From positions 51,646,567-51,691,201 of the forward strand of contig NC_068987.1 of assembly GCF_001194135.2 (NCBI RefSeq): a stretch of 44,635 bases of DNA. Reading direction: 5' to 3'. Made by a program: the position numbers and the translations under genes. The stretch comes from Octopus bimaculoides (lineage: Eukaryota). This document shows, piece after piece, positions 17,620-37,200 of the stretch; the first letter of the stretch is position 1; each line of letters opens with the position of its first letter. Below the pieces are notes generated by a model that worked only from the letters and a program-made list of their open reading frames with translations, searched no databases and was not told the origin of the DNA.

Positions 17620-18860
17620 GATATTCCCACTTCTAAAACACTTCAAACATATAATAGCACATATAATGATTGATTATTTATTTAAGAAGTCATGTAAAAG
17701 GAAAAAAAATGTAATATACCAATGTATAGTCTACTTGACTTCGATGACACTATTTACAAACAAATATCTGTGGCTGCGACAAAAGCTGGTTAATGATAAT
17801 ATTTACAAACAAACATCTACGGCTGCAATAAATGTTGCTCCGACTTACGCCAATCTAGTCACGGCATAGACAATAATATCAACTTCACCATGGAATGCAG
17901 TAAAATTCAGGTACCATTCCTGAATATATTAATCATCAAAATAGATAAAAAGCATTGAAACAGAGATTCACTACAAACAAATTCGAAACAACACCTACTA
18001 TTCTCCTCATGCCACCCTAAACATACGAAAAATAATATTCGCTTTAATCTACCAAGAAGAACCAGCACAATTTTCTTAAACTATGTAAGTCACAATAGAT
18101 AACTCCGGGACTTAATAGACGACTCCAAGAATTAATAGATGACTCCGGGAATTAAAATAAATACTATTTAATGGACTATAAGCCTTAATGCTAATAGACA
18201 ACGGTATACAACTGCCAAAAGAGATATTCAAGAACTACGTAAAACGAAGAAACCTCCAGATACATGCAATACTGTACACAACCTAGCACACAACCTAAAA
18301 ACACAGAAGCTTGCAACATTATCCATCAGAACATTCAGCTACTAAAACAAGACCCAAAAATGAAACAGGCATTCGAAATACACACAATAATCAAAAGCAG
18401 AAGAGAATGGATGTCTATCCAAAATTTCCTCACCAGCGCTTACTACCTTCCACAATTCCGACCCTAACAGCGAAAGAGTATTGCTGACCCAGTTGCTGGA
18501 CTTGTACCAACCTTATTGACGACGCAACACAAATTCAAATACGGACGAATTGTTATCATGAAAAAATCATTTTATATGTTCATCAGAGAATTTAATATAC
18601 GCTATTCAATGTCAAAGACGTAACGAAGATTACGCAGGTCAAACAAAGCGTACTCTCAGAAATAGACTGACCATCCTCCGAGAACAAATATGAAAATCCA
18701 GTACTAGACAGATTCCACTAAGTAGACATTTAGAGATATGTGCGAAAAGTAAGTTCCTCAAATACCAGGTCATCAAATTCTAAATTGATTAGTGAATACC
18801 ACAAACGAAGCACGAATAAGCAGCGAAAACACATTCATCCAAAAATACAAACAAGTACTT
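17620..18860 (+). mobile_element. Penelope-like element (Penelope/Poseidon-type): RT, thumb and GIY-YIG, decayed
   Basis: DFDDTIYKQIS, NVAPTYANLV, NINFTMECSKIQVPFLNILI, HLLFSSCHPKHTKNNIRFNLPRR, LIYAIQCQRRNEDYAGQTKRTLRNRLTILREQI (18591-18690). Confidence 0.8.
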
Positions 18861-20005
18861 AACAAACTTTAATAGAGAACATACGTAAATATCTATTCAT
18901 ACACAAAATTCATTCTGTCATTTAACATGAGGAATCTACACAGCTAATAGCCTAAACTTTACACACTGGACTACATACAAACGACAACTCTCCACTCTCC
19001 TACCTGGCATATTAAATTCAGATTATCTTGACTTTAACTAAACATGTTCACTCAAAGTTTTCGGGCTTAACTTTAGTGCAAAATATGCTATCAGGTGATA
19101 ATATCGCATGGACCTAGCGGGAAACATACAAAAGATTCTTAACTTAATCACCCGATCATTCTCTACAGCACTTGACAGAAAACATTCATAGCATTCATTG
19201 ATTGGTACTGTCACTAGCCATGTTCACTCAACCGTGCCAGCCTTAACTTACGACGCCAAACACAAACACAAGGACGTAGATGGGGACACGAGAAAATTTC
19301 TAAAACCAGTCATGTGACTACCCTATGCACATCAATTTCTATCAAGAACATAAAAAATACGAGAAGCTCCGAGAACTTGTCAGAAGCAAGACAGATGCGA
19401 CGGCATAACCCACGTCTTTTGTAAATCAGTGTTCACTGTGAAGGCGGTCAAATCAATCATAAAATATAATTACGAAAATTAACTATTCCCAGTGTATTTC
19501 AATTATTTTTTTGTATCTCTATCCCCGTGGAACAAACTAACTTTGTTTATTATACATTGTATATATATATAAATGGAAGTGGAGAGACAAGTTACTGAAG
19601 AGATTGCAAGAGTGCAATGAAATAATTTAACAAAAAAACTATATAAATTAATAAAGGACTGAACCTGTGCGTGTGTTTATTACCGGCATAATGCCTCTCC
19701 CAAGGTTTAATTATATTTCTTTCAACACACGNNNNNNNNNNGTATATTCATGTACATAAGTATATATATATATACACATATGTGTAGATGTACATTTACA
19801 CAGATATACACATGTGATGTGTGTGTGTGTACATTCATATATATGTATGCGTGCACACACACACACACATATGTATATGTATACAGATAGATAAATGGTC
19901 GCACTCAATAATATATATTATATATCTATATCTATGAATCTCCCAAAATGTATATAGTTGTAGATAGAGTTGCATAAGTATATATGAATTTTGATAAACG
20001 TATTT

Positions 20006-21226
20006 ATGTAGTTTATAAAGTCAATACAGGTTTCAGAGACAACCAACCTCTCTCTGTATGCGTAAGTGTGGAAGATTGTGTGGTGAGTGCATTTGTATGT
20101 GAACGTCTGTTTCGGAGCAATTATTGAAGTATTTATTTATTAACTATAGAATTAAAACAGAACTGCAGGAAATGTATACACACACACATGTATATACAAA
20201 CATATATGTGTATATATATATATATATNNNNNNNNNNNNNNNNNNNNNNNNNNNNNNNNNNNNNNNNNNNNNNNNNNNNNNNNNNNNNNNNNNNNNNNNN
20301 NNNNNNNNNNNNNNNNNNNNNNNNNNNNNNNNNNNNNNNNNNNNNNNNNNNNNNNNNNNNNNNNNNNNNNNNNNNNNNNNNNNNNNNNNNNNNNNNNNNN
20401 NNNNNNNNNNNNNNNNNNNNNNNNNNNNNNNNNNNNNNNNNNNNNNNNNNNNNNNNNNNNNNNNNNNNNNNNNNNNNNNNNNNNNNNNNNNNNNNNNNNN
20501 NNNNNNNNNNNNNNNNNNNNNNNNNNNNNNNNNNNNNNNNNNNNNNNNNNNNNNNNNNNNNNNNNNNNNNNNNNNNNNNNNNNNNNNNNNNNNNNNNNNN
20601 NNNNNNNNNNNNNNNNNNNNNNNNNNNNNNNNNNNNNNNNNNNNNNNNNNNNNNNNNNNNNNNNNNNNNNNNNNNNNNNNNNNNNNNNNNNNNNNNNNNN
20701 NNNNNNNNNNNNNNNNNNNNNNNNNNNNNNNNNNNNNNNNNNNNNNNNNNNNNNNNNNNNNNNNNNNNNNNNNNNNNNNNNNNNNNNNNNNNNNNNNNNN
20801 NNNNNNNNNNNNNNNNNNNNNNNNNNNNNNNNNNNNNNNNNNNNNNNNNNNNNNNNNNNNNAAACAATGATGTATGAATCCTTAGAAATTTCTGTGCTGA
20901 AATTACAAGCAAAAATATAAGTAAGGAAAGAGATATTATATTTATAGAAGATTAAGAAACGAAATATAGACATATAATAAAGGAAACTTGTTGTAGAAAT
21001 CCCTATTGAATTCTTTGCAATTTGAATAATTTGAACCTTACTTGATACAATAAAATCATTTATTAATATATGCAAACATAAAGAATAGCAAAAGAGTTTA
21101 AAATATGTAATGGTTCTTATAAGCTGCAATTCGGAGAAATGAATTGTGCAAAATGTGATACAATCGTTGGTAACGTTGATTTAATGCCATACATTTGTGC
21201 AGAGAATATAATTTTCCACACACACA

Positions 21227-21257
<31 letters not shown>

Positions 21258-23208
21258 CCACACACACACGCACACACACACACACAAACATATTTACATA
21301 CGTATACATACAGACAAATACATATACCTGTATGTACATATATGTTGTATTCTTTTCTCCCCCACACATATATTCCTATTATATATACATCACTAGGTAA
21401 GCATATTAATCGTTATTGCGAAGCTAACATGGTAGTCCAGAAAAATAACACGAATGCTGCCATTGCTTAGCTCGAAGAGGTCATCGCCTCTACCTAGCTA
21501 TGTGACACACGAAGCTGTGTCCATTATAACCTTCGAACAAGGGAGGTCAGCCGCTTCCCCTTCTTTGTCTGGCATCTACAGACTTGTTTCAGGTTATTTG
21601 CCCCTTATCAATGCAGTTTATAAAGTCAATACAAGTTTCACAGACAACCAACCTTTGTGCGTAAGTGTGTAAGATTGTGTGGTGAGCGTGTTTGTTTATT
21701 AACTATAGAATTAAAACAAGACTGCAGGAAATGCATACACACACATATGTATATACAAACATATATGTATATATATGCATATACATGTATATATATATAT
21801 ATCGATATACATATATATATACATATACATGCATATATATATTTATATATATGCATGACTATGTATAACAATGCATATATACATACATATATAAATATAT
21901 ATGCATGTATATATACAAGCATATATATATATATGTATATATACATATATATACATATACATGTACATATGCGCTCATATTTACACTCTCACCTACACAC
22001 ACGCGTACATACATACGCACACACACACACATATATATTTATATATGACTATATATATANNNNNNNNNNNNNNNNNNNNNNNNNNNNNNNNNNNNNNNNN
22101 NNNNNNNNNNNNNNNNNNNNNNNNNNNNNNNNNNNNNNNNNNNNNNNNNNNNNNNNNNNNNNNNNNNNNNNNNNNNNNNNNNNNNNNNNNNNNNNNNNNN
22201 NNNNNNNNNNNNNNNNNNNNNNNNNNNNNNNNNNNNNNNNNNNNNNNNNNNNNNNNNNNNNNNNNNNNNNNNNNNNNNNNNNNNNNNNNNNNNNNNNNNN
22301 NNNNNNNNNNNNNNNNNNNNNNNNNNNNNNNNNNNNNNNNNNNNNNNNNNNNNNNNNNNNNNNNNNNNNNNNNNNNNNNNNNNNNNNNNNNNNNNNNNNN
22401 NNNNNNNNNNNNNNNNNNNNNNNNNNNNNTACACATTACAGGAGGTTTCCGATATCGTATAAAGGTATATAAAACAAATAGCAATCATATATAAATCCTT
22501 ACAAATTTCTGTGCTGCATTTGAAGTAAAAATATAAATAAGGAATAAGATATTATATTTATAGAAGATTAAGAAACGAATTATAGACATACAATAAATGA
22601 AACGTGTTCTAGAAATCCCTATTGAATTCTTTGCAATTTGAATAATTTGAACCTTACTTGCGACGATAAAATCATATAATAATATATGCAATCATAAAGA
22701 ATACCAAAAGAGATTAAAATATATAATGGTTCTTATAAACTGCAATTCAGAGAAATGAATGGTACAAACTGTGATACAATCGTTGGTAACCTTGATTTAA
22801 TGCCATACGATTGCGCATAGAATATAATTTTCCACACACAGACAGACACACACACACACATACACACACACACGCACAGAAACATATGTACATACGTATA
22901 CATACAGACAAATACATATACCTGTATGTACATATATGTTGTATTCTTCCCCCCCCCCCACATATTCCTATTATATATGAATCAGTATATAAGCATATTA
23001 ATAGTTATAACGAAGCTAACATGGCAGTCGAGAAAAATAGGACGAATACTGCCGTTGCTTAGCGCGAAGAGGCCATCGCCTCTACCTAGCTATGTGACAC
23101 ACGAACCTGTGTTCATTATAACCTTCGACCAGGGAAGGTCAGCCGCTTCCCCTTGCTAGTCTAGCATCTACAGAATAGCTTCAGGTTATTTGCCCCTTAT
23201 CAATGTAG
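20006..23208 (+). repeat. Diverged ~1.6-kb tandem duplication (20006-21610 and 21611-23208)
   Basis: 20012-20220 matches 21617-21775, 20875-21410 matches 22490-23005, and 21410-21613 matches 23000-23205. There are many substitutions, so this is not a simple assembly duplicate. Confidence 0.9.
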
Positions 23209-23716
23209 AGCAGAAGAACCAAGCAGGAATCGCTACTGACCGAGTCTGCGAAGGATTATTTACCTAAATTCCGTGGAATACGTCCACTGGTTTTCAAAAA
23301 TAGAAATATTAATATTTCTAAATCTCTCTAAAGGATACTACGGCAGGCGTACTGGATATTAATAGTTATCGCCAAGCTAACATGGCAGTCCAGAAAAATT
23401 GAAGGAATGCTGCCGTTGCTTAGCTCCAAGAGGACATCGCCTCTAGCTTGCTATGTGAACACGAAACTGTGTCCATCATAACTTTCGAACAAGGGAGGTC
23501 AGCCGCTTCCCCTTGCTTGTCTGGCATCTACAGACTATTTTCAGGGTATTTGCCCCTTATCAGTGTAGAGCAGCTGAACCAAGCAGGTGTCGCTACTGAC
23601 CGTGTTTTCGAATGATTATTTGAGTAAATTCAGAGAAAATCCAGTGGTTTTCAAAAACAGAAATATTAATCTGTCTAAATCTTCCTAAAGGATCCTACGG
23701 CAGCGGTATTGGATAT
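22995..23716 (+). repeat. ~361-bp diverged tandem duplication (hairpin module + left part of the MITE)
   Basis: atattaatagttat occurs at 22995 and 23356. The units are collinear through to ...aaggat(a/c)ctacggcag...tggatat. Confidence 0.9.
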
Positions 23717-23798
23717 GTATTCCATTGAATTTAGGTAAATAATCCTTCGAACACACGGTCAGTTTGCGACGCCTGCTTGCTTGGGGTGCTCTACATTG
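23561..23798. mobile_element. MITE-like element of 238 bp with ~80-bp imperfect terminal inverted repeats; a truncated duplicate lies at 23201-23355
   Basis: Left end CAGTGTAGAGCA..CAAGCAGG..ACTGACCGTGTTTTCGAATGATTATTT; right end (reverse complement) CAATGTAGAGCA..CAAGCAGG..ACTGACCGTGTGTTCGAAGGATTATTTACCTAAATTC. No clear TSD. Confidence 0.65.
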
Positions 23799-24020
23799 AA
23801 TAGAATACAGTAATACAGTAATAAATAAGTAAAAAAAGAAAATGACGTAATTTTCTCAAGTTGCACACATTTTCATTTATAAAGTGAACAAGTGGATACC
23901 AGTAAGGATATGAAATAAGGATAAACCTGTTATAGGCTTTTTTGTGAGACGGGGGGAGAGCGGGAGAGAGAGGGAGAGAGAGAGTATATGTATATATATA
24001 TATCTATCTATCAATCTATC

Positions 24021-24104
<84 letters not shown>

Positions 24105-26213
24105 TATNNNNNNNNNNNNNNNNNNNNNNNNNNNNNNNNNNNNNNNNNNNNNNNNNNNNNNNNNNNNNNNNNNNNNNNNNNNNNNNNNNNNNNNNNNNNN
24201 NNNNNNNNNNNNNNNNNNNNNNNNNNNNNNNNNNNNNNNNNNNNNNNNNNNNNNNNNNNNNNNNNNNNNNNNNNNNNNNNNNNNNNNNNNNNNNNNNNNN
24301 NNNNNNNNNNNNNNNNNNNNNNNNNNNNNNNNNNNNNNNNNNNNNNNNNNNNNNNNNNNNNNNNNNNNNNNNNNNNNNNNNNNNNNNNNNNNNNNNNNNN
24401 NNNNNNNNNNNNNNNNNNNNNNNNNNNNNNNNNNNNNNNNNNNNNNNNNNNNNNNNNNNNNNNNNNNNNNNNNNNNNNNNNNNNNNNNNNNNNNNNNNNN
24501 NNNNNNNNNNNNNNNNNNNNNNNNNNNNNNNNNNNNNNNNNNNNNNNNNNNNNNNNNNNNNNNNNNNNNNNNNNNNNNNNNNNNNNNNNNNNNNNNNNNN
24601 NNNNNNNNNNNNNNNNNNNNNNNNNNNNNNNNNNNNNNNNNNNNNNNNNNNNNNNNNNNNNNNNNNNNNNNNNNNNNNNNNNNNNNNNNNNNNNNNNNNN
24701 NNNNNNNNNNNNNNNNNNNNNNNNNNNNNNNNNNNNNNNNNNNNNNNNNNNNNNNNNNNNNNNNNNNNNNNNNNNNNNNNNNNNNNNNNNNNNNNNNNNN
24801 NNNNNNNNNNNNNNNNNNNNNNNNNNNNNNNNNNNNNNNNNNNNNNNNNNNNNNNNNNNNNNNNNNNNNNNNNNNNNNNNNNNNNNNNNNNNNNNNNNNN
24901 NNNNNNNNNNNNNNNNNNNNNNNNNNNNNNNNNNNNNNNNNNNNNNNNNNNNNNNNNNNNNNNNNNNNNNNNNNNNNNNNNNNNNNNNNNNNNNNNNNNN
25001 NNNNNNNNNNNNNNNNNNNNNNNNNNNNNNNNNNNNNNNNNNNNNNNNNNNNNNNNNNNNNNNNNNNNNNNNNNNNNNNNTACTGTATAAAGGTAACGCG
25101 TGCGTTCTGTCGTGATACAAACAATATATGAGTATATGCATATATATGTACATGTATGTATATACGTTCATCTACATGTACATATAGATACATAACTGGG
25201 TACATGACGTGGCAAAAGAACAAGGACAAAATGGTAAACAAGGTGCAACAAACAAGCAGGCCACATAGAAACATCCCCTTCATCAGCTGCCACCATTAAA
25301 ACTCCGGCGTTTCGAAGAATCAGAGCAGTACGCATCGTTAAAATGGTTCTTCCCACGAATACAACTTAAATTGTTTTCGTGGAGGGTAGTAGCGGACGGA
25401 AAACAAGGCAGGAAAACGAAACGGTGAAATAAACAAACAAAAAGGCTGTACAGCCATATATATATATATATAACGCCATATGTACACAAACCTAAGTTTG
25501 TTTTTGAAGTGTTGAAATGTATTATAGAACAATTAGAAAGATATATTTTTTCAACACTGTTAGATCATTTTATATAGGATAAAATCCTTTAAGAGCAGAA
25601 AAATTGGTCGGCAACCAGCATATATATATAAACACAACATATGATGCGAGCATGTTAGACTGTATTTTGAACACGTCTTGTGTTTCAGTGCCATCTTCAG
25701 GTTTCAGGCAGTGGCCACATGGTACAAAACCCTAAAAATGGTACGATAGCGTAAGAGAAAAACTAGAAAATGCGGGTAAGATGTTGATATAAAACATGGA
25801 AAGTTGTAAAACCTCAAAAATATAAAGAAAACTGAAAGAAGCAAAGCGGCGTTAATTAGAGTTATTTCCTCTTTGACCGTAACATATAAAACTGAAAAGA
25901 TAATGTCTGTTCAATGCGGAGAGGGTAGCACTTTCCAATTTGTCCACAAGAACTCAACCATAAGCTTACAACCACTTAAAATTTCAGATGTAGAATTCAG
26001 CAATGTGTTGAAATTCTTAGATCTGAAATGTATCTTAGTTTTTTTCAGCTACGAATAGTTTACATTTTTTTGATCTGTTAACATATGGTGTGGAGTTTTC
26101 GTCTAGTTTCTATATTATCCTATGTGTTATGGCGTTTGAGTTGAATCACCATACGTTGCTAGCCAACTTAGTAGCCTTACTTTTGTCCTTGCGTAGGCAG
26201 TTTTCTTTTGTCC

Positions 26214-26271
<58 letters not shown>

Positions 26272-27986
26272 TGCACCCACGGACACATGCATGCGCGCAC
26301 GCACACACATATGTATGAACTGGTAGATAAGGACTAATTATTCTGGTGAGTGCAGTTCGAGCACCAACATCTGGTTTATATGCATTCCATACATTGTTTT
26401 TTTTCCGGCATTGAGAATCTGGATATGAAGATGGAAAAGATGGATGTTCGATTTATACATTGAACTTAAAACCACCACCCGGTAATGACGTACTTTTCTG
26501 CAAGTATTCAGATTAATGTTCGGTTTTGAAGAAATCTTGCTAGCTTCTCGCTTATCCTCTGTAGTTCATTAAAACTTCATGGGCACTGACCTTCTCTGTT
26601 GTCAACCGAAGGAAACATTCCATAATATGTAATAATGTATAGTTCCATATGCATCATATTGAATTACTATGATTAGTCCTTCCTACTCTTAAAGATGCCA
26701 GTGTGTGTAATTAAAGAAATACTGCTTTTGATTTATAGATGAAAGTTTTACGATGCACAGGACACTCACTGGAATGTTTAATCAAAAATGATTACGTTAA
26801 GGTATCAATTGAATTAATGAATCACTAGAATATCTATTATGATTTGGTTGGCTCGCTTTTATTGGATATGTTTAAGTTGAAGCTGGAGGAAAATAAAATG
26901 AAAATCTCTGTGATGAGAATTTGGGTAAACACAGTTATTGAAATTAATTAAATCTAATTTAAATTAATTATGCATCACAATTAGGTAATTATATATTTGG
27001 TAGTTTTCATCTTGATGAAACAGCTGTTAAACACAATTAAAGTAGAAACGATATTTAAGCTTTTCTGTTTTTATATTACATAAGTAAGAAAAAAATAGAG
27101 AATTCATGCTTTTTTAGCATAAAAGTATAACAGGCTTATGATTTTAGAACTACTACAGCAATTTTTCGGCTTTACATTTTCAGCAAAAGCTCAAATGCTT
27201 TCATTTATGCACGTGCCCTTACAACCTGTACATTCTTAATGCGAAAACCAACACCTGATACCACTCATTTTTAAATAATCTTTATTTTTCTAAGGTATTT
27301 TACAATATGATATTTAAAAAATATTCCTATTCTCACTAAATTAGATTTTTGCAAGTCATTAACGTCAGCTTTTGAATTCTAACAGCGGTTTTGGTGTCAA
27401 CAAAACAACAAGTTATTCTCGATCCTTTGTTTTACATATAAAACTGTGCTTTATGTGGTAATGTCTATAAAATATTTTAAAACCACGCTGTAAATTAACA
27501 GAGAATCGACAATTATACTATCACCTATAGCGGTTAGCATGATGGTGATGGTGATTTTCTTTTATTTCTTTCTCACAAATATTTTACTTTTGAGTAATTA
27601 GTTAATGTGATAATCTTTTTATTTTAGATTATCATTTTTTTTCCATTGTGCATAGATTGCCACAATAGATTGTTGGCCATACAATACATTAATTTAATTA
27701 AAACAAGTTAATTCATTATTCTTCTTAAATTTATTGACTACCTAATTTACTCTCTTCCCATAAGCGTAGTCTAATGTTCTGCATGACACAAGTGGATGTA
27801 AGATGAAAGACTTCACTGCTTGGATAAACAAAAAAAGCGAGGTGAGGCACGAGACTTTACATCTGGAATGCATTAGAAAACTTGGCATATAAAGTATAAC
27901 GTGCTGTTTCTCCTTGAAACACTCGTAAATATTAGGCGACACATTTGTTATGAGAATATTGTACAAATATCTACGCTCAGATAATA

Positions 27987-30759: not shown

Positions 30760-33611
30760 AGACCCTATTCCAGTAACTTCTAGTAACCGGGTCTCTGTCT
30801 ACGAATCCTATCTAACTCGACTCTGCAGATCACAAACTTGTCGTCAGTGTAGCCGACCAATTTAAATTGTGGACAACCTACTCTACCCCTCTTCTCTGAC
30901 CTACCAAATGCTCTATCTAGATACGATTTGGGTGTCGCATTGTCAGTCATCCAAATCAATACTGGCACATCAGAGAAATTCAGTCGATACCTATTAGACA
31001 ATTGGAAGTCCCTGAATAGGTTTACGAGTGTTTCGCATACCCTTCTGCATACCCTACTAGCCCCACACAGTCCTTACGCGCGTCCAAAATTCCATTCCAG
31101 TCCGCTACTAGTACTAAACAGCGAGACGTTCCCAGGAAAGTTTCTAAACTCCTGTAGAATTCTGGTCTTTCAACTGCTGTCGGGGCATAAAAGACCACCA
31201 ATCTAAAGGCGCCACTTTCGCTACTGTTCACATCTATGACCACCACCCTGCCGAGCGAGTCCAAGAAGTTTGCCGTTACTTCGATATCTAAGGATTTTCG
31301 GAATAACACTGCGGACCTGCTGCCAGCTCCCGACAGAATACCTCGCAGTCATCGAAAATGGGCGCTAATCTTTGTCTCGATAATTGCAGCCACATCTAAA
31401 TCGAGCAACCTAAGATCGTTTAGCGTGTGACCGTGCTTCCAAGCTGAACCCAGGCCACGAATATTCACACACTCTACTCTGAAAACAACCATGTTTATCG
31501 GAGAAACAAAGGGAGAGAAGGTCACTTACCTTGGATTTTGAAAGGGTCGTCTGATTCAGCTGTCTCATCTGAGGCATTCTCATTAATGAAGGGCTTTCCT
31601 AAAATCCTCTTATCCGGCTCTAGACTAAAAGGCCCAATGTCTTTTGGATATCTTTAAAAGTTCTAGATAATTATTACTCTCTGTTTTTATCAGCGAGTTT
31701 TTGACAGAAATCAGTCTAACTACTCCTTTTGTGTGAATGTTTGTGTTTTCCCTTATTTCCTGTATCACACGCTGTTGCTATTGCGAACGACTGTGAAGTA
31801 AATGAAGCGTTCGGGTTCTGTAGTCAGTTTTATGGGTTGTTCTTGTGAATGGTGTTTCTCTTCATGTATTTATTTCTGTTTTGGTGCTTTTTATAGTTCT
31901 GGTTGTGGTTGAATGGGTGTGTTTTCGCTTTTGTTGTTGGGATTTGGGTTGGTGTGTCGGTGTTGTTAGTGTAGCTGATGGATTAGGTGAATTTTCCTCA
32001 ACCTGTCTTTTTCCTTTCAGTTTAGGACGGCCCTTTGTGGAACTAGTTTTCGCTTTTCCCCAACACAGGTCATTCTTGGGGGACTTAGTTCGTTCTCGTC
32101 GCATGATAAGGCTTGTGAATCGCCCGTGTCGGGTGTCTGTGGTGAACCTATTTCACCCGCCGGTAGGGATGGTCGGTTGTTGCTTGTTTCAACTGCTACA
32201 GTTGTTGGTGCCATTGTGGTGGTGGCATTCTGTTTAGAGAATTTTGCTTTAATGGCTGTTGCTGCATTGGTTGTTGCTGCAGGTTTTGGGCTTCTTGTGA
32301 TACTGGTCTCAGAGCCGCCGTTCCTCGAGCTCGCTTTTGTTGATTTGGTTTGGAGTTGACTTTCAAATGGGCGTTGGACCCACAAGTGTAACACCTTGGC
32401 TTTCTGCCTTCCACCATGATTTGGAGTTGTGCTCCGTTGGGCAGCTCCAGTACCTTGTGCAGGGATGTCGGTTATACCTGTATCAAAATTTCCAACCCGA
32501 TTCCGGACCAGTTCTCCTTCCGATATTTATCAATTTTGAGAAGCAAATCCGAGCCTTCAACTACAGCGTACGCAATCAACCACCAAATGTCTAATTCCGG
32601 TGGCGCATCTGATATTTTAACTTTCACCACATGCAGTCCTAGTTATGTGGGAAATAGAAGAAGACCCTCGTGTTTGCACTGGAACCGTGAGTATTTTTGG
32701 TCCAGTGCCTCTGTGAGGAACTTCACATCCACAGAACCATATTGTCTCCCTCGTGTGAGGAAATTAATATAAGTCCAAATGCCCTTCTAGCATTTTCCTA
32801 CTTGGATGTGTGACGCATTGAAGATTTTCCTCGTCTTTAGCGACACACATTTGTATATGATGGTCTCTCTGGCCGTCTTCTCCATCAAATCTGAAGGAAT
32901 AGTATGCTTCATTTTCCTATCCACTCTATTGGTGATTGGTGAGTTTTTCTGCTTCACTCAGGTACGGATGTTTTCCTTCTAGGGAGATTTGCTCCTGCGA
33001 TTTAGTTACTCCTGCAAAGGAGTTGTTTTAATCGTTACTGTTATTGATTATATCGTTTTTGCTGCTGGTGTTGTTCCTGTCGTTGTTGGTGTTAATCAGA
33101 GCCAAAATGACCCTATCGTTTCTGGTGGTTTTCATATCGTTGACTGAAGTAGCCAAGGTCCTTGATAACGTGGGGTGGGATCATTTACATCGTATTTGTA
33201 CTGCTCATATGTGTCTCCTGCCAAAGCTTTAATGTTGCTGTTGCTGTTGCTGCTGCTGCTACTGCTGTTACTGCTGTTGTTGCTGCTACAGTTGTTTTTG
33301 TTGTTCCTCCTAGTAGTACTGGCAGAGGTGATAGTGGCGGTGGTGTCGGAGGTGTTGTTTGTGATTGGGCCAGTCATTTTGTTTTGCCTGCTTGCTTGTC
33401 TAGTAGTCACGCCAACAGGCGAAGAAATGTCACCCTCCCAAGACAATGAGAGAATTTTAACGAAAAAGGAACTCACCTACAGAAGGAGGATCCCTTATTC
33501 TCCATCCTGGGTCAAAATGACAGGAAAACACCGAAATTTTCTGGAGAAAACTGACGATTTACGAAAACAGAATATGGAGCCGAGGTCAAGCGTGGCTTCT
33601 TTGGATGACGG
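30760..33611 (-). mobile_element. L1/Tx1-clade LINE 5' portion: 5' UTR, ORF1 with zinc knuckle, and ORF2 APE endonuclease; truncated after the endonuclease
   Basis: ORF1 runs from an ATG at 33377 (MTGPITNNTSDTT..) to VEGRKPRCYTCGSNAHLK (CCHC-like). Endonuclease motifs are DSLGRVVVIDV..FRLVVFYAP..LVLVADWN, SYLDRAF and YTDDKFV..RPGY*KL. Confidence 0.88.
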
Positions 33612-33612
33612 C

Positions 33613-33677
<65 letters not shown>
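33613..33677. repeat. (AAT)n microsatellite
   Basis: Direct reading. Confidence 0.97.
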
Positions 33678-33678
<1 letters not shown>

Positions 33679-34159
33679 CTATATACACTGGAAGCTATGC
33701 CAACATTATGGAATAACAACAGAAAAAAGATGGTATAAACACACGCTAGAAAAGGTCAGAGAAAACGAGAAAGCAACCATAATCTGGGATATGCCAATAC
33801 ACACAGATAGAGAAATTAAGGCAAATAGACCAGATATAGTTGTCAAAGTATATCAATACTAGCAGATGACAACGTTTCTCTAAAAGAAATGGAAAAACTT
33901 TCAAAATACAAAGACCNNNNNNNNNNNNNNNNNNNNNNNNNNNNNNNNNNNNNNNNNNNNNNNNNNNNNNNNNNNNNNNNNNNNNNNACAAATATATATA
34001 ACATACAGAAAATTGCACTACTGGGTACTGCACACATTCTACGCAAAACACTTTCAATACAGTAAACATAAGAGCACCACAGCAAACCACAGCACATACC
34101 CAAGGCGCACAGAGCTGCGCTCGGTAGTGAAGTGAAAGCACGTTATAAAAATAAAACTA

Positions 34160-34263: not shown

Positions 34264-37200
34264 GGGAAGAGCGATAAAAGTAAAAAGGGTGGTTAATAGA
34301 CACAGAAATAGAAGATATAAAAAGGGATGTAGAAGATAGGAATAATACTTCACCAACAGGTAATGTGCCCAGTGAGAATAGAAAAATGAAATGTGGCAGT
34401 GAAGAAGTAGAGCAAAGTGTAAATGTAAATGCGTTCTCAGCAATTGAAGCAGAATAGGAAGAGCTATATCACAAGAATACGATGATGACCAACAAGACAT
34501 AGTGAGGACGCTGTGCCGATATATAAGACGAGAAATATAATTGAAACTAACAGATATAATTTGGGCTTCAGCTATGGTTGCTGCACATAATGCTGGATGC
34601 AAAAGAAAAGAAGAAGCAGAAGGTAAAGGACCATACTGACGTAGACGAATTTGAGAGGAAATGTATAAAAGGACATTTGCGAGAAGTTGATAGATTAAGA
34701 AGTAGAGAACTATAAAAAAGAAGCATAAGAATAATGCTGGAAAGAACATATAGAATGAGAAGTAAAGGTTATGATGTGATATCGGAAGAATTGAAGCTGA
34801 GTAGTAGCTATCAAAACAAAGCTGGAAAGATTTGCCAATGGAAAAAGACAGTTCGGGCAAAACAGATAGTTCGAAGCAAATCAGAAGAAACTGTTTCAAG
34901 CACTAGATGGGCAAATACACGTAACAATAATACCAGATGCAGAAGAAAGCAAGGCGTTCTGGAGAGGAACCTTGGACAAAGCTGTAGAGCATTATGATGA
35001 AGCAGAGTGACTGCATGAAATCCAAGATAGGTTAAAAAATATAGAAACCCAAGATGACATGAAGATATCTACAGAAATAATTAAAAAGAGCAGTTAAGAA
35101 AATTCCTAAATTGGAAGAGCCTAGGACCGGATAAGATCCAAGGGCATTGGATGAAAATGCTGAGAGGGCTCCATGAAAGGATAGCACAACAGTTAGATGA
35201 ATGCTTTTAGAAAGGCGCTGTTCCTCGTTGAATAACAAAAAGAAAGACATTGGTATGTGCCAAAACGCCTGACAAGGGAAATGTATCCAACTTTAGAACA
35301 ATAAAATGTCTTCCGCTAATGTGGAAACTAATGTCAGGTACTTTGGCTCGTGAACTGTACAAATACTTGGAAAAAAGTGGACTGCTACCCATTGAAAAGA
35401 AAGGATGTCAAAAGAGGTGCCGGATAACGCAGGATGAGCTCTTAATTGATAATCTAATTATCAGGAACTACAAGAGAAGACATACAAACCTGAGCATGGC
35501 ATGGGTTGATAATCCCAGAGCATACAACATGATACCACACACCTGCATAATAAGAACAATGAAAATATATGGAGTAGCAGAGCATATGAGAAGCCTTATA
35601 TGGAATAGCGTGAAATACTGGAGAACGGAATTCACAGCAGCGAATCATATACAAGGAGAGGTGAAAATAAAGAGAGTAATCTCCCAAAGAGACTGTGCAT
35701 CTCGACTGATATTCGTAATGGGAATGGTGCACTTGAGTGAAATACAACAGAAAACAAAGTTGGGGTATGGTCTGGAAAGAGGTAAGGGAAAACTAAGCCA
35801 CTTGCTATACATGGATGACATGAAGCTATTCACAAACGTGATCAGTACTGGACTTCGTAGACCAATCTGTGCATATTTTCTCCAATAATATTGAGATGAA
35901 GTTTGGACTCACAAAATATGCTACGATGGAAAGCTTGGCAGGACAGAAGGCATGTGGTTACCAAATGGTGAAATGATGAAGGCAAATCAACTTCAATCCG
36001 GCTATAAATACTTGGAAATAGTGGAGGCAGAAGGAATCAGACATTATGACATGAAAGAAAAGACAAAATAGAGCACCTGCGGCGATGAAGAAAAATATTG
36101 TCTTGTAAGCTGAATGCAAGAAACATGATTTCGGCAATAAACTCTCGCAGCACAGTCGCAGTAGTTTGGTATGGCGCTGGAATCCTGAAGTGGAGAGAGG
36201 ATGAGCTAAAGGATATGGACATGAAGTCAAGAAAGCTCCTAACGATGCATGGAACCCATCATCAACGAGCAGACACTGATCGCCTATACATAAAGAGAGC
36301 AAATAGAGGAAGTGGACTGATAAGTGTGGAAGATTGTGTGCGTATCGAACTCGAGAGCTTAATGAGATACCTAGTCCAAAGTAAGGAAACCTTTCTAGTG
36401 ACAATTAGGAAGGAGGGAGTATTGGGAGCAGAGAAGAAAGGGAAAACAAATGAAGAAATACAAGAAGGATATGACGAAGAATTACGCAAGAAGTTTCTAT
36501 TCAATCAATTCCATGTAGCCAAAACGAAAGTTTCTGGAAAAGATAGGTAGAATTGGCTGATGAAAGGCACTATACCGGCAGCGCAGGACCAAGCGCTGGC
36601 CACGAGAGTCAGCCTGAGGACTGAGTAAGTGTCTCCGCTGTGCCGCATCTGAAATAGAGGAGATGAAACCATTGCCCACATCACGAATGAATGCCCTAGA
36701 CGTGTCCAAAACCACTACATGTTGTGGCGACACGATCAGGTAGCGAAAGTGCTACATTGGAAACTGTGTGAAATGCAGGCTCTAGAGAGAGGTTAGACGT
36801 GGTATGAGCACATACCGCACACGATAAAGTGGCCGAGTCGTGGACTAACAAAATCCTCTGGGATTTCCGAATCGAAACAGATCAGATGCTAGAGCATAAC
36901 AGACCAGACCTAGTAGTTGTCGACAAGGTGCACCATATACGCTAGTTGACGTTGCATGCTACTTTGACCAACGAATAATGAAGAAGGAAGGCGAACAGAT
37001 AGATAGTTGCAACCCGCTTAAGTCCGGACTATCGAATATGAAGAAGGTGAGCTTAGTGCCAATTATTACCGGTTGCTTGGGGACAATATCAGAAGGAATC
37101 AAGAGGAATATATGGGAATTTGGAATAGAATGCCCAGTGAGACTATTACAAATGCTTTGCCTCCTTGGCACGGCCAGAATAATCAGAAAAGGATTAGATA

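What the first reader, a model, noticed from the sequence alone, without database searches (positions are those of the whole stretch)
21423..23535. Three-copy ~200-nt multi-hairpin module with pairing-preserving substitutions (candidate structured RNA)
Seen in sequence: copies begin at 21423, 23015 and 23376, each folding by eye into up to five consecutive hairpins on the + strand. H1 is GCTAA..ATGG(C/T)AGT / (A/G)CTGCC(G/A)T..TTAGC. H2 is AGAGG-Ncatcg-CCTCT, with only the loop base varying. H3 is GACACA-cgaaNc-TGTGT(C/T). H4 is AC(C/T)TTC-7 nt-G(A/G)AGGT. H5 is GTCTG-gcatcta-CAGAC. Six stem differences between copies interconvert Watson-Crick and G-U pairs, which works only on the + strand. 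One position covaries (TCG/CGA in copy 2, TCC/GGA in copy 3, C-C mismatch in copy 1). Counter-evidence: H5 is broken in copy 2 and H3 has a 1-nt deletion in copy 3. It does not resemble tRNA, spliceosomal snRNAs or hammerhead/HDV cores as I recall them. Inference: an unrecognised ncRNA, or a structured transposon-derived element, amplified twice by independent local duplications. The stems were chosen post hoc from three sequences, so significance is unproven.
Basis: partly seen in the sequence, partly recalled or inferred. Interest (0 to 1): 0.7.

Follow-up and report, generated by a model that had tools for sequence, protein, structure and literature searches.

The report
Tandemly duplicated non-coding DNA segment
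The three ~214-base copies are real, but they were copied together with their flanking DNA by two nested local tandem duplications, and their small hairpins and substitutions are not convincingly different from neutrally decaying DNA, so this is most likely ordinary duplicated non-coding sequence and not a new structured RNA.

Summary
The copies are not independent. Copy 1 and copy 2 belong to a ~1.6 kb tandem duplication, and copies 2 and 3 to a 361-bp tandem duplication. Both junctions sit in short microhomologies. An 82-nt piece just 3' of the module is also present inverted, forming a ~240-nt hairpin.

Evidence against a selected RNA structure:
- The module is no better conserved than its co-duplicated flanks (88.8% vs 90.4%; 87.3% vs 83.8%).
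- RNAalifold finds no compensatory pair on the + strand.
- Consensus energy, structure conservation index (SCI) and conserved-hairpin counts match simulated neutral decay (P 0.2-0.4).
- Hairpin density and fold z-scores fall within the window's background.
- Rfam and ARAGORN find nothing, there is no coding signal, and the window holds no further copy.

One weak signal remains. On the + strand only, substitutions break fewer predicted pairs than random placement, with P from 0.001 to 0.5 depending on how the structure is defined.

No tool here reaches this genome or its relatives, so copy number and transcription are untested. Verdict: ordinary, low interest.

The parts
21403..21616 (+). Module copy 1. 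It is truncated at its 3' end by the junction of the 1.6 kb duplication.
   Evidence: BLASTN 88.9% to copy 2 and 88.8% to copy 3; alignment A1
22995..23208 (+). Module copy 2
23356..23568 (+). Module copy 3, with a 1-nt deletion in H3
20006..21610 (+). Unit A of the ~1.6 kb tandem duplication. It contains assembly gap 20228-20861 and ends in module copy 1.
   Evidence: 20006-20227 matches 21611-21786, and 20865-21616 matches 22482-23208 (86.7% over 752 nt)
21611..23208 (+). Unit B of the ~1.6 kb tandem duplication. It contains assembly gap 22060-22429 and ends in module copy 2.
   Evidence: flank identity 90.4% against module 88.8%
21608..21616 (.). Junction J1 of the 1.6 kb duplication, in the microhomology ATG(T/C)AG. 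That motif is shared by the unit end (TCAATGTAG|AGCAG) and the unit start (TTTATGTAG|TTTAT).
   Evidence: read directly (sequence 19940-20140) and alignment A1
22995..23355 (+). First unit of the 361-bp tandem duplication: module, arm and loop
   Evidence: 22995-23359 matches 23356-23716 at 84.7% over 365 nt
23356..23716 (+). Second unit of the 361-bp tandem duplication. Junction J2 lies in the microhomology ATAT at 23352-23359.
   Evidence: sequence
23200..23281 (+). Arm A2, the 82-nt segment directly 3' of module copy 2
   Evidence: 83% identical to the reverse complement of 23717-23799
23560..23632 (+). Arm A3, the left arm of the long hairpin
23717..23799 (-). Arm A4, an inverted copy of the arm. 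With A3 it forms a ~240-nt hairpin with a ~93-nt loop.
   Evidence: DNA fold -60.7 kcal/mol, z = -11.3; inverted repeats I1-I4
22060..22429 (.). Assembly gap between copy 1 and copy 2. It follows a TA/CA microsatellite.

Best explanation
A single ancestral stretch of non-coding DNA was multiplied by local DNA-level rearrangements in a microsatellite-rich region. That stretch held the ~214-nt 'module' followed by an 82-nt arm and a ~75-nt spacer.

Three rearrangements are shown:
- A ~1.6 kb head-to-tail duplication produced copy 1 and copy 2. Its junction lies in the 6-nt microhomology ATGTAG, at the foot of the arm.
- A 361-bp head-to-tail duplication produced copy 2 and copy 3. Its junction lies in ATAT.
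- An inverted copy of the arm was laid down next to them, creating a long hairpin.

Inferred steps:
- All pieces are about equally diverged (81-90%), and the breakpoints reuse the same few positions. I infer from this that replication template switching or slippage made them in one complex event or in quick succession.
- The copies have since decayed neutrally. The five small hairpins are short inverted repeats inherited from the one ancestor, at a density normal for this sequence. The 'G-U preserving' differences are ordinary transitions that happen to fall in them.
- No RNA function is needed to explain what is seen.
For: Shown:
- Co-duplicated flanks and unit structure.
- Junction microhomologies, read.
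- The module is no better conserved than the flanks. It is 88.8% vs 90.4% (Fisher P=0.50) for the 1.6 kb duplication and 87.3% vs 83.8% (P=0.36) for the 361-bp duplication.
- RNAalifold on the + strand gives 0 compensatory pairs, 8 one-sided changes, 9 broken cells and a covariation term of +1.23 kcal/mol, which is a penalty.
- The same transitions and transversions were placed at random on the inferred ancestor. Consensus energy, mean MFE (minimum free energy) and SCI were as good as the real values in 20%, 31% and 27% of trials on the + strand.
- An objective hairpin picker finds 38 conserved pairs in the real triple against 36.7+/-4.2 in neutral triples (P=0.38).
- Hairpin counts and z-scores fall within background.
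- There is no Rfam hit on the module even at E<=10, and no tRNA.
- Stops occur in all six frames of every copy. The consensus open frame has no Pfam match, no protein homologue and no codon-position bias.
- Profile nhmmer with filters off finds no further copy of the module, arm or flank in the window.
Against: A + strand-only trend remains:
That structure was chosen after seeing the data.
- Cross-validation folds each copy and counts the pairs broken in the others. It gives 32 broken against 49+/-7 (P=0.012-0.017), with nothing on the - strand (P~0.5).
- The signal weakens to P=0.09 when the single gap column is dropped.
- With structures predicted from the inferred ancestor it ranges from P=0.001 to 0.53.

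Limits of the data:
- Copy number elsewhere in the genome and transcription are unknown.
- The scaffold order across two N gaps is taken on trust.
Confidence: 0.75

Rival explanations
1. The ancestral copy is a relic of a non-autonomous mobile element. The module might be a SINE-like body, and the arm-loop-arm part a MITE or foldback-like unit. It was later caught up in the local duplications. This concerns the origin of the sequence and is compatible with neutral decay afterwards.
For: - The size fits: ~214 nt for the module plus ~240 nt for the hairpin.
- The hairpin has long terminal inverted arms (z=-11.3).
- The 82-nt arm behaves as a discrete unit, because both of its ends are reused as breakpoints.
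- 19-nt inverted repeats lie at 23716-23734 and 23791-23809.
- On the - strand the module is followed by a degenerate (TG)n/(TATG)n tract.
Against: - There is no second, independent copy of the module, arm or flank in 44 kb, even with profile search and filters off.
- ARAGORN and Rfam find no tRNA-like head.
- There is no clear target-site duplication around 23560-23799 (read).
- A resemblance to the CORE domain of MIR, recalled from memory, is not significant: score 26 against shuffles 22.4+/-3.6, with 16% of shuffles as good, and nhmmer finds no hit.
- Microsatellites are everywhere in this window, so the 'tail' may be incidental.
Confidence: 0.2
2. The module encodes a lineage-specific structured RNA of ~180-200 nt read from the + strand, held in a small local gene cluster. 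Selection keeps H1, H2, H3, a hairpin at H4 and H5, tolerating G-U.
For: - The + strand-only deficit of pair-breaking substitutions.
- + strand folds are more stable than shuffles for copies 1 and 2 and for the consensus (z -3.3, -2.3, -2.5).
- H1 keeps 13 pairs in all copies through three one-sided changes.
Against: - The module and its stems diverge as fast as the co-duplicated spacer DNA. That is not expected for a constrained RNA or for small-RNA gene arrays.
- No compensatory double change exists.
- The signal is fragile (P=0.09; 0.08-0.53 with the ancestor's MFE structure), and several statistics were tried.
- H5 is doubly broken in copy 2 and H3 carries a deletion in copy 3.
- There is no Rfam relative.
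- z-scores lie within the top ~10% of background tiles, not beyond.
Confidence: 0.06
3. The apparent tandem arrangement is a scaffolding artefact. Short contigs from paralogous copies of a dispersed repeat were joined across N gaps.
For: The region consists of three short contigs (19742-20227, 20862-22059, 22430-24107) separated by estimated gaps. Both 1.6 kb units break at the same microsatellite.
Against: - The head-to-tail junction (module copy 1, then the start of the next unit) and the whole 361-bp duplication with the inverted arm each lie inside a single contig.
- 10-13% divergence excludes collapsed or duplicated alleles.
- No other copy exists in the window.
Confidence: 0.07

Closest known systems
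Microhomology-mediated tandem and complex duplications (replication slippage, FoSTeS/MMBIR; duplication with an inverted segment)
   Same: - Head-to-tail copies include their flanks.
- Junctions have 4-6 nt of microhomology (ATGTAG, ATAT).
- An inverted segment lies next to the duplicated block.
- Breakpoints cluster at the foot of an inverted repeat and beside microsatellites.
   Different: The mechanism is inferred from the end product only. The events are old (10-19% divergence), so junction details may have drifted. Whether there was one event or several cannot be told.
tRNA-derived SINEs and CORE-SINEs (for example octopus OR1, listed as a CORE-SINE in PMC4824008)
   Same: Length of a few hundred bases, non-coding, hairpin-rich. 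A simple-repeat tract lies next to one end.
   Different: - No A/B-box or tRNA-like head detectable.
- No significant match to a MIR consensus recalled from memory.
- No target-site duplication.
- No dispersed copies in the window.
- The copies carry their flanks with them, so they spread as DNA, not by retroposition.
MITE / foldback elements
   Same: The 23560-23799 part has ~75-83-nt inverted arms around a short loop with its own central palindrome.
   Different: This concerns the neighbour of the module, not the module itself. There is only one instance, no clear target-site duplication, and the arm also occurs alone, in direct orientation, at 23200-23281.
Tandem arrays of small-RNA genes (5S rRNA, U snRNA, spliced-leader RNA units of ~0.3-2 kb)
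   Same: A ~200-nt hairpin-rich segment recurs once per ~1.6 kb unit.
   Different: In such arrays the RNA-coding part is far better conserved than the spacer, and units are homogenised. Here the module is 88.8% identical against 90.4% for the spacer. There are only two units, and no Rfam family matches.

Membership tests
Any described RNA family (Rfam 15) | Covariance-model match at or near the family's gathering score | tested here: not met
   There were 0 hits at gathering over the whole window. At E<=10 nothing lies on the module except 13-17-bit chance hits (SNORD78, sR12, mir-1205) far below threshold.
Conserved structured RNA (generic) | Compensatory (both-sided) base-pair changes beyond chance | tested here: not met
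RNAalifold on the + strand finds 0 compensatory pairs. That pair is two independent single changes from an ancestral C.C mismatch.
Conserved structured RNA (generic) | Substitutions avoid breaking pairs, compared with neutral placement | tested here: inconclusive
   + strand: P=0.012-0.017, 0.09 without the gap column, and 0.001-0.53 with ancestor-derived structures. - strand: P~0.2-0.9. Consensus energy and SCI are not different from neutral.
Conserved structured RNA (generic) | The element is better conserved than the surrounding neutral DNA | tested here: not met
   Module 88.8% vs flank 90.4%; module 87.3% vs extension 83.8%. Fisher P=0.50 and 0.36.
tRNA-derived SINE | tRNA-like 5' head with A and B boxes | tested here: not met
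   ARAGORN finds 0 genes. There is no tRNA (RF00005) match at E<=10 on either strand.
tRNA-derived SINE | Many dispersed copies, each with its own flanks and target-site duplication | tested here: inconclusive
   The window holds no extra copy, and the three copies share their flanks. The rest of the genome could not be searched.
CORE-SINE (MIR-like) | Similarity to the ~60-bp CORE domain | tested here: inconclusive
   Only a MIR consensus recalled from memory was available. The best local alignment is 21 nt with score 26, and 16% of shuffles score as well. nhmmer gives no hit on the module. The octopus OR1 sequence was not obtainable.
MITE / foldback element (for 23560-23799 only) | Terminal inverted repeats | tested here: met
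   Arms 23560-23632 and 23726-23799 are 82-87% complementary, z=-11.3.
MITE / foldback element (for 23560-23799 only) | Target-site duplication and multiple genomic copies | tested here: inconclusive
   The flanks CCCCTTA| and |ATAGAAT show no clean direct repeat. There is no other copy in the window, and the genome was not searchable.
Protein-coding exon or pseudogene | An open frame with homologues, or codon-position bias of substitutions | tested here: not met
   Stops occur in all frames of every copy. The consensus 92-codon frame has no Pfam hit and no homologue. Variable columns fall 11/6/14 by codon position, P=0.21.

The most novel reading that the evidence does not exclude
The module is a lineage-specific, previously undescribed ~180-200-nt RNA read from the + strand. 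It would have a long 5' hairpin (H1) followed by four short hairpins, sit in a small local cluster, and have its structure weakly maintained through G-U-tolerant substitutions.
Probability: 0.05. Interest if true: 0.5.

Novelty: already known. Interest (0 to 1): 0.1.

Why it matters
As it stands it matters little. Locally duplicated non-coding DNA next to microsatellites is commonplace in large, repeat-rich animal genomes.

The case is useful as a caution. Three ~88%-identical paralogues from one ancestor will nearly always allow several short hairpins to be drawn that 'survive' in all copies. About half of all transitions look pairing-preserving on one strand. Only a comparison with co-duplicated neutral flanks and with simulated neutral decay shows this.

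If the residual + strand trend were real, it would point to a new small-RNA family restricted to this lineage.

The clustered, microhomology-bearing breakpoints around an inverted repeat are a tidy natural example of palindrome-associated complex duplication.

Tried and rejected
- Known RNA families: Rfam at gathering and at E<=10, on the window and on sub-regions, found nothing on the module. The mir-297/mir-466 type hits are TA/CA microsatellite. The MIR447/MIR8562 hits (33-36 bits against gathering scores of 200-211) only reflect the long hairpin.
- tRNA or tRNA-like head: ARAGORN found none.
- Coding: six-frame translation, Pfam, and a word-indexed search of 5.8 billion proteins with the 92-aa consensus frame found nothing.
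- More copies outside the window:
  - Exact-pattern scans of metagenome (two), GTDB genome and IMG/VR collections gave 0 hits.
  - Window ORFs are not in the protein collection.
  - The window's reverse-transcriptase ORF has only 43-44%-identical relatives there.
- Literature: full-text search for 13-21-mers of the module and of the MIR core gave no relevant paper. SINE papers hold no sequence supplements.
- CORE-SINE/MIR resemblance, recalled from memory: not significant.
- Homology of 23800+ to the start of the 1.6 kb unit, which would imply a third unit or an empty site: only an 18-20-nt match, P~0.02-0.07. Not accepted.
This is too few events to decide.
- A first background z-score run timed out and was repeated smaller.
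Full report
**What is there**

The sequence at 21000-24200 and BLASTN of the three units against the window confirm three + strand copies at 21403-21616, 22995-23208 and 23356-23568. They are 88.9%, 88.8% and 87.1% identical pairwise. There is no fourth copy in the window, by BLASTN with 7-nt words or by profile nhmmer with all filters off.

**The copies are not independent**

A self-comparison of 18000-27000 shows two nested tandem duplications.
- The first has a ~1.6 kb unit. 20006-20227 matches 21611-21786, and 20865-21616 matches 22482-23208 (86.7% over 752 nt). Copy 1 and copy 2 are therefore the last ~214 nt of two successive units.
- The second has a 361-bp unit: 22995-23359 matches 23356-23716 (84.7%). 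It gives copy 2 and copy 3.
- Copies 2 and 3 continue 3' into an 82-nt arm (23200-23281 and 23560-23632). This arm is also present inverted at 23717-23799 (81-83% identity).
- Arms 23560-23632 and 23726-23799 form a ~240-nt hairpin (DNA fold -60.7 kcal/mol, z=-11.3).

Read directly from the sequence, the 1.6 kb junction lies in ATG(T/C)AG. That motif is present at both the unit end (TCAATGTAG|AGCAG) and the unit start (TTTATGTAG|TTTAT). The 361-bp junction lies in ATAT.

The breakpoints cluster.
- The 1.6 kb junction falls in the first 9 nt of the arm.
- The inverted copy is exactly the arm.
- The donor point ...GGATAT is used both for the 361-bp junction and for the start of the inverted copy.

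Pairwise distances between the three modules are star-like, with 6, 11 and 11 private changes. I infer one complex replication-template-switch event, or several in quick succession. This is inference from the end product.

**The assembly gap**

The gap at 22060-22429 lies between copy 1 and copy 2, and none of the copies spans it. Copy 1 is inside contig 20862-22059, and copies 2 and 3 are inside contig 22430-24107. The other 1.6 kb unit has its own gap (20228-20861) at the same internal position, just after the same TA/CA microsatellite. The two units therefore cannot bridge each other's gaps, and continuity is unproven.

Order and orientation are the same in both units. The offsets on the two sides agree (1605 and 1617 nt), but both include estimated N lengths. 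The head-to-tail junction itself, and the whole 361-bp duplication with the inverted arm, lie within single contigs. No reading frame is involved.

**Is it a known RNA, a tRNA-like element or coding?**

- Rfam gives no hit at gathering in the whole window.
- At E<=10 the module region gives only 13-17-bit chance matches. The stronger sub-threshold hits are microsatellite-driven miRNA models and long-hairpin plant miRNA models on 23558-23802.
- ARAGORN finds no tRNA.
- Every frame of every copy has stops.
- The three-copy consensus has a 92-codon open + frame. It has no Pfam match and no relative among 5.8 billion proteins. The variable columns fall 11/6/14 over codon positions (P=0.21).

**Are the hairpins unusual?**

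- H2-H5 are 5-6-bp stems worth -5.3 to -6.4 kcal/mol, and H1 is worth -11.8 to -15 kcal/mol.
- Shuffled 181-nt sequences of the same dinucleotide content carry 3.2+/-1.2 hairpins of stem >=5 bp and loop 3-8. The copies have 4, 5 and 5 (P=0.36, 0.07, 0.17). Of the window's 181-nt tiles, 43% have >=4 and 18.5% have >=5.
- Whole-module z-scores are -3.3, -2.3 and -0.9 on the + strand, -0.7, -1.0 and -1.5 on the - strand, and -2.5 for the consensus.
- Background tiles of this window have mean z -0.46 and sd 2.4, and 10% reach -2.5.
A GGGAGG/CUUCCC hairpin of -9.7 to -11 kcal/mol wins in all copies and in RNAalifold.

**Is the structure under selection? Evidence against**

1. RNAalifold on the + strand gives -44.7 kcal/mol with a covariation term of +1.23. 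It finds no compensatory pair, 8 one-sided changes and 9 broken cells. The - strand gives -40.9 kcal/mol with 2 both-sided changes.
2. The one 'covarying' pair (columns 19/32) is C.C in copy 1, G-C in copy 2 and C-G in copy 3. That is two independent single changes from a mismatch.
3. The module is no better conserved than DNA duplicated with it. The figures are 88.8% vs 90.4% (P=0.50) and 87.3% vs 83.8% (P=0.36).
4. I placed the same numbers of transitions, transversions and deletions at random on the inferred ancestor. Consensus energy, mean MFE (minimum free energy) and structure conservation index (SCI) were as good as the real values in 20%, 31% and 27% of trials on the + strand, and in about 40% on the - strand.
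5. An objective picker of conserved local hairpins finds 38 pairs in the real triple against 36.7+/-4.2 in neutral triples (P=0.38).

**Is the structure under selection? Evidence for**

P(broken<=3) is 0.003, 0.001 with the mutation spectrum preserved, and 0.003 with clustering preserved. Those helices were chosen from these very sequences.
- Replacing H4 by the favoured hairpin gives 4 kept and 4 broken: P(kept>=4)=0.39, P(broken<=4)=0.003.
- A cross-validation statistic folds each copy alone and counts the pairs broken in the other two. Its null is simulated from the ancestor. It gives 32 against 49+/-7 on the + strand (P=0.017, 0.012, 0.014) and about 52 against 52 on the - strand.
- That P rises to 0.09 if the one gap column is removed. 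The pairwise versions give 0.26, 0.09 and 0.11, and co-duplicated flank tiles give 0.5-0.9.
- Using structures predicted from the inferred ancestor only, the + strand gives P=0.08-0.53 (MFE) or 0.001-0.105 (centroid). The - strand gives 0.2-0.85.

I read this as a weak, + strand-only trend. It is not robust to the definition of the structure or to the number of statistics tried. It is also at odds with the neutral rate of change in the stems.

**Origin of the ancestral sequence**

A transposon-derived origin cannot be excluded. In its favour are the long inverted arms, the reuse of both arm ends as breakpoints, 19-nt inverted repeats at 23716-23734 and 23791-23809, and a degenerate (TG)n tract next to the module.

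Against it, the window holds no independent copy, no tRNA-like head is detectable, and no clean target-site duplication is seen. A resemblance I recalled between the module (GCCTCTACCTAGCTATGTGAC) and the CORE region of mammalian MIR is not significant. The alignment score is 26 against shuffles of 22.4+/-3.6, with 16% as good, and nhmmer finds no hit.

**Limits**

- The source organism is not verified. The window is an AT-rich, microsatellite-rich eukaryotic scaffold with 13 N gaps and a reverse-transcriptase fragment.
- None of the collections reachable here contains the source genome or close relatives.
- Genome-wide copy number, orthologues and expression therefore remain untested.

**Verdict**

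The structured-RNA part is not supported. The most likely account is neutral decay of a locally duplicated non-coding segment (confidence about 0.75). I give about 5% to a genuinely new + strand RNA, and about 20% to the ancestral sequence being a mobile-element relic, which is compatible with neutral decay.

Noticed in passing
window 23560-23799 (arms 23560-23632 and 23726-23799; related arm 23200-23281): A ~240-nt near-palindromic hairpin lies directly 3' of module copy 3. Its arms are 82-87% complementary, the loop is ~93 nt, and the DNA fold has z=-11.3. It is far more striking than the module's hairpins. It could be a foldback/MITE-like unit or a source of hairpin RNA.
   Followed up: partly
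window 21608-21616, 23200-23281, 23352-23359, 23716-23717, 23799: Breakpoints cluster. Both ends of the 82-nt arm, and the point ...GGATAT, are each used in more than one rearrangement junction, with 4-6-nt microhomologies (ATGTAG, ATAT). This suggests one complex template-switching event or a discrete mobile unit.
   Followed up: partly
window 23301-23320 (and the degenerate copy at 23659-23677): A perfect 20-nt palindrome, TAGAAATATTAATATTTCTA, lies in the spacer. In the second unit its degenerate copy falls near the centre of the long hairpin's loop.
   Followed up: no
window 23716-23734 and 23791-23809: 19-nt inverted repeats (84% complementary) bracket the inverted arm and reach 9-10 nt beyond it. 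This gives a ~94-bp mini-element-like unit.
   Followed up: no
window 20228-20861 and 22060-22429: Both 1.6 kb units carry an assembly gap at the same internal position, right after the same TA/CA microsatellite. The assembly probably failed there for the same reason in both. The true unit length is not known.
   Followed up: partly
window 35250-35885 (+): A 212-aa ORF contains a reverse-transcriptase domain (Pfam RVT_1, E=2.5e-7, YMDD motif), probably a LINE fragment. The best database relatives are only 43-44% identical (one from Amphimedon queenslandica, the others unnamed).
   Followed up: partly
consensus of window 21393-21616 / 22985-23359 / 23346-23716: The three-copy consensus has a 92-codon stop-free + frame. 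It is interrupted by a stop in copy 1, an earlier stop in copy 2 and a frameshift in copy 3. It has no Pfam match, no protein homologue and no codon-position bias, so it is judged to be chance.
   Followed up: yes
window 33175-33738 and 41602-42087: Long trinucleotide-type simple repeats give poly-Leu, poly-Asn, poly-Ser and poly-Ile pseudo-ORFs. Together with the many (CA)n and (TA)n tracts, they show how repeat-rich the window is.
   Followed up: no
window 19031-19073 and 19207-19249: A 43-nt direct repeat, two copies 176 nt apart at 74% identity, lies upstream of the duplicated block.
   Followed up: no
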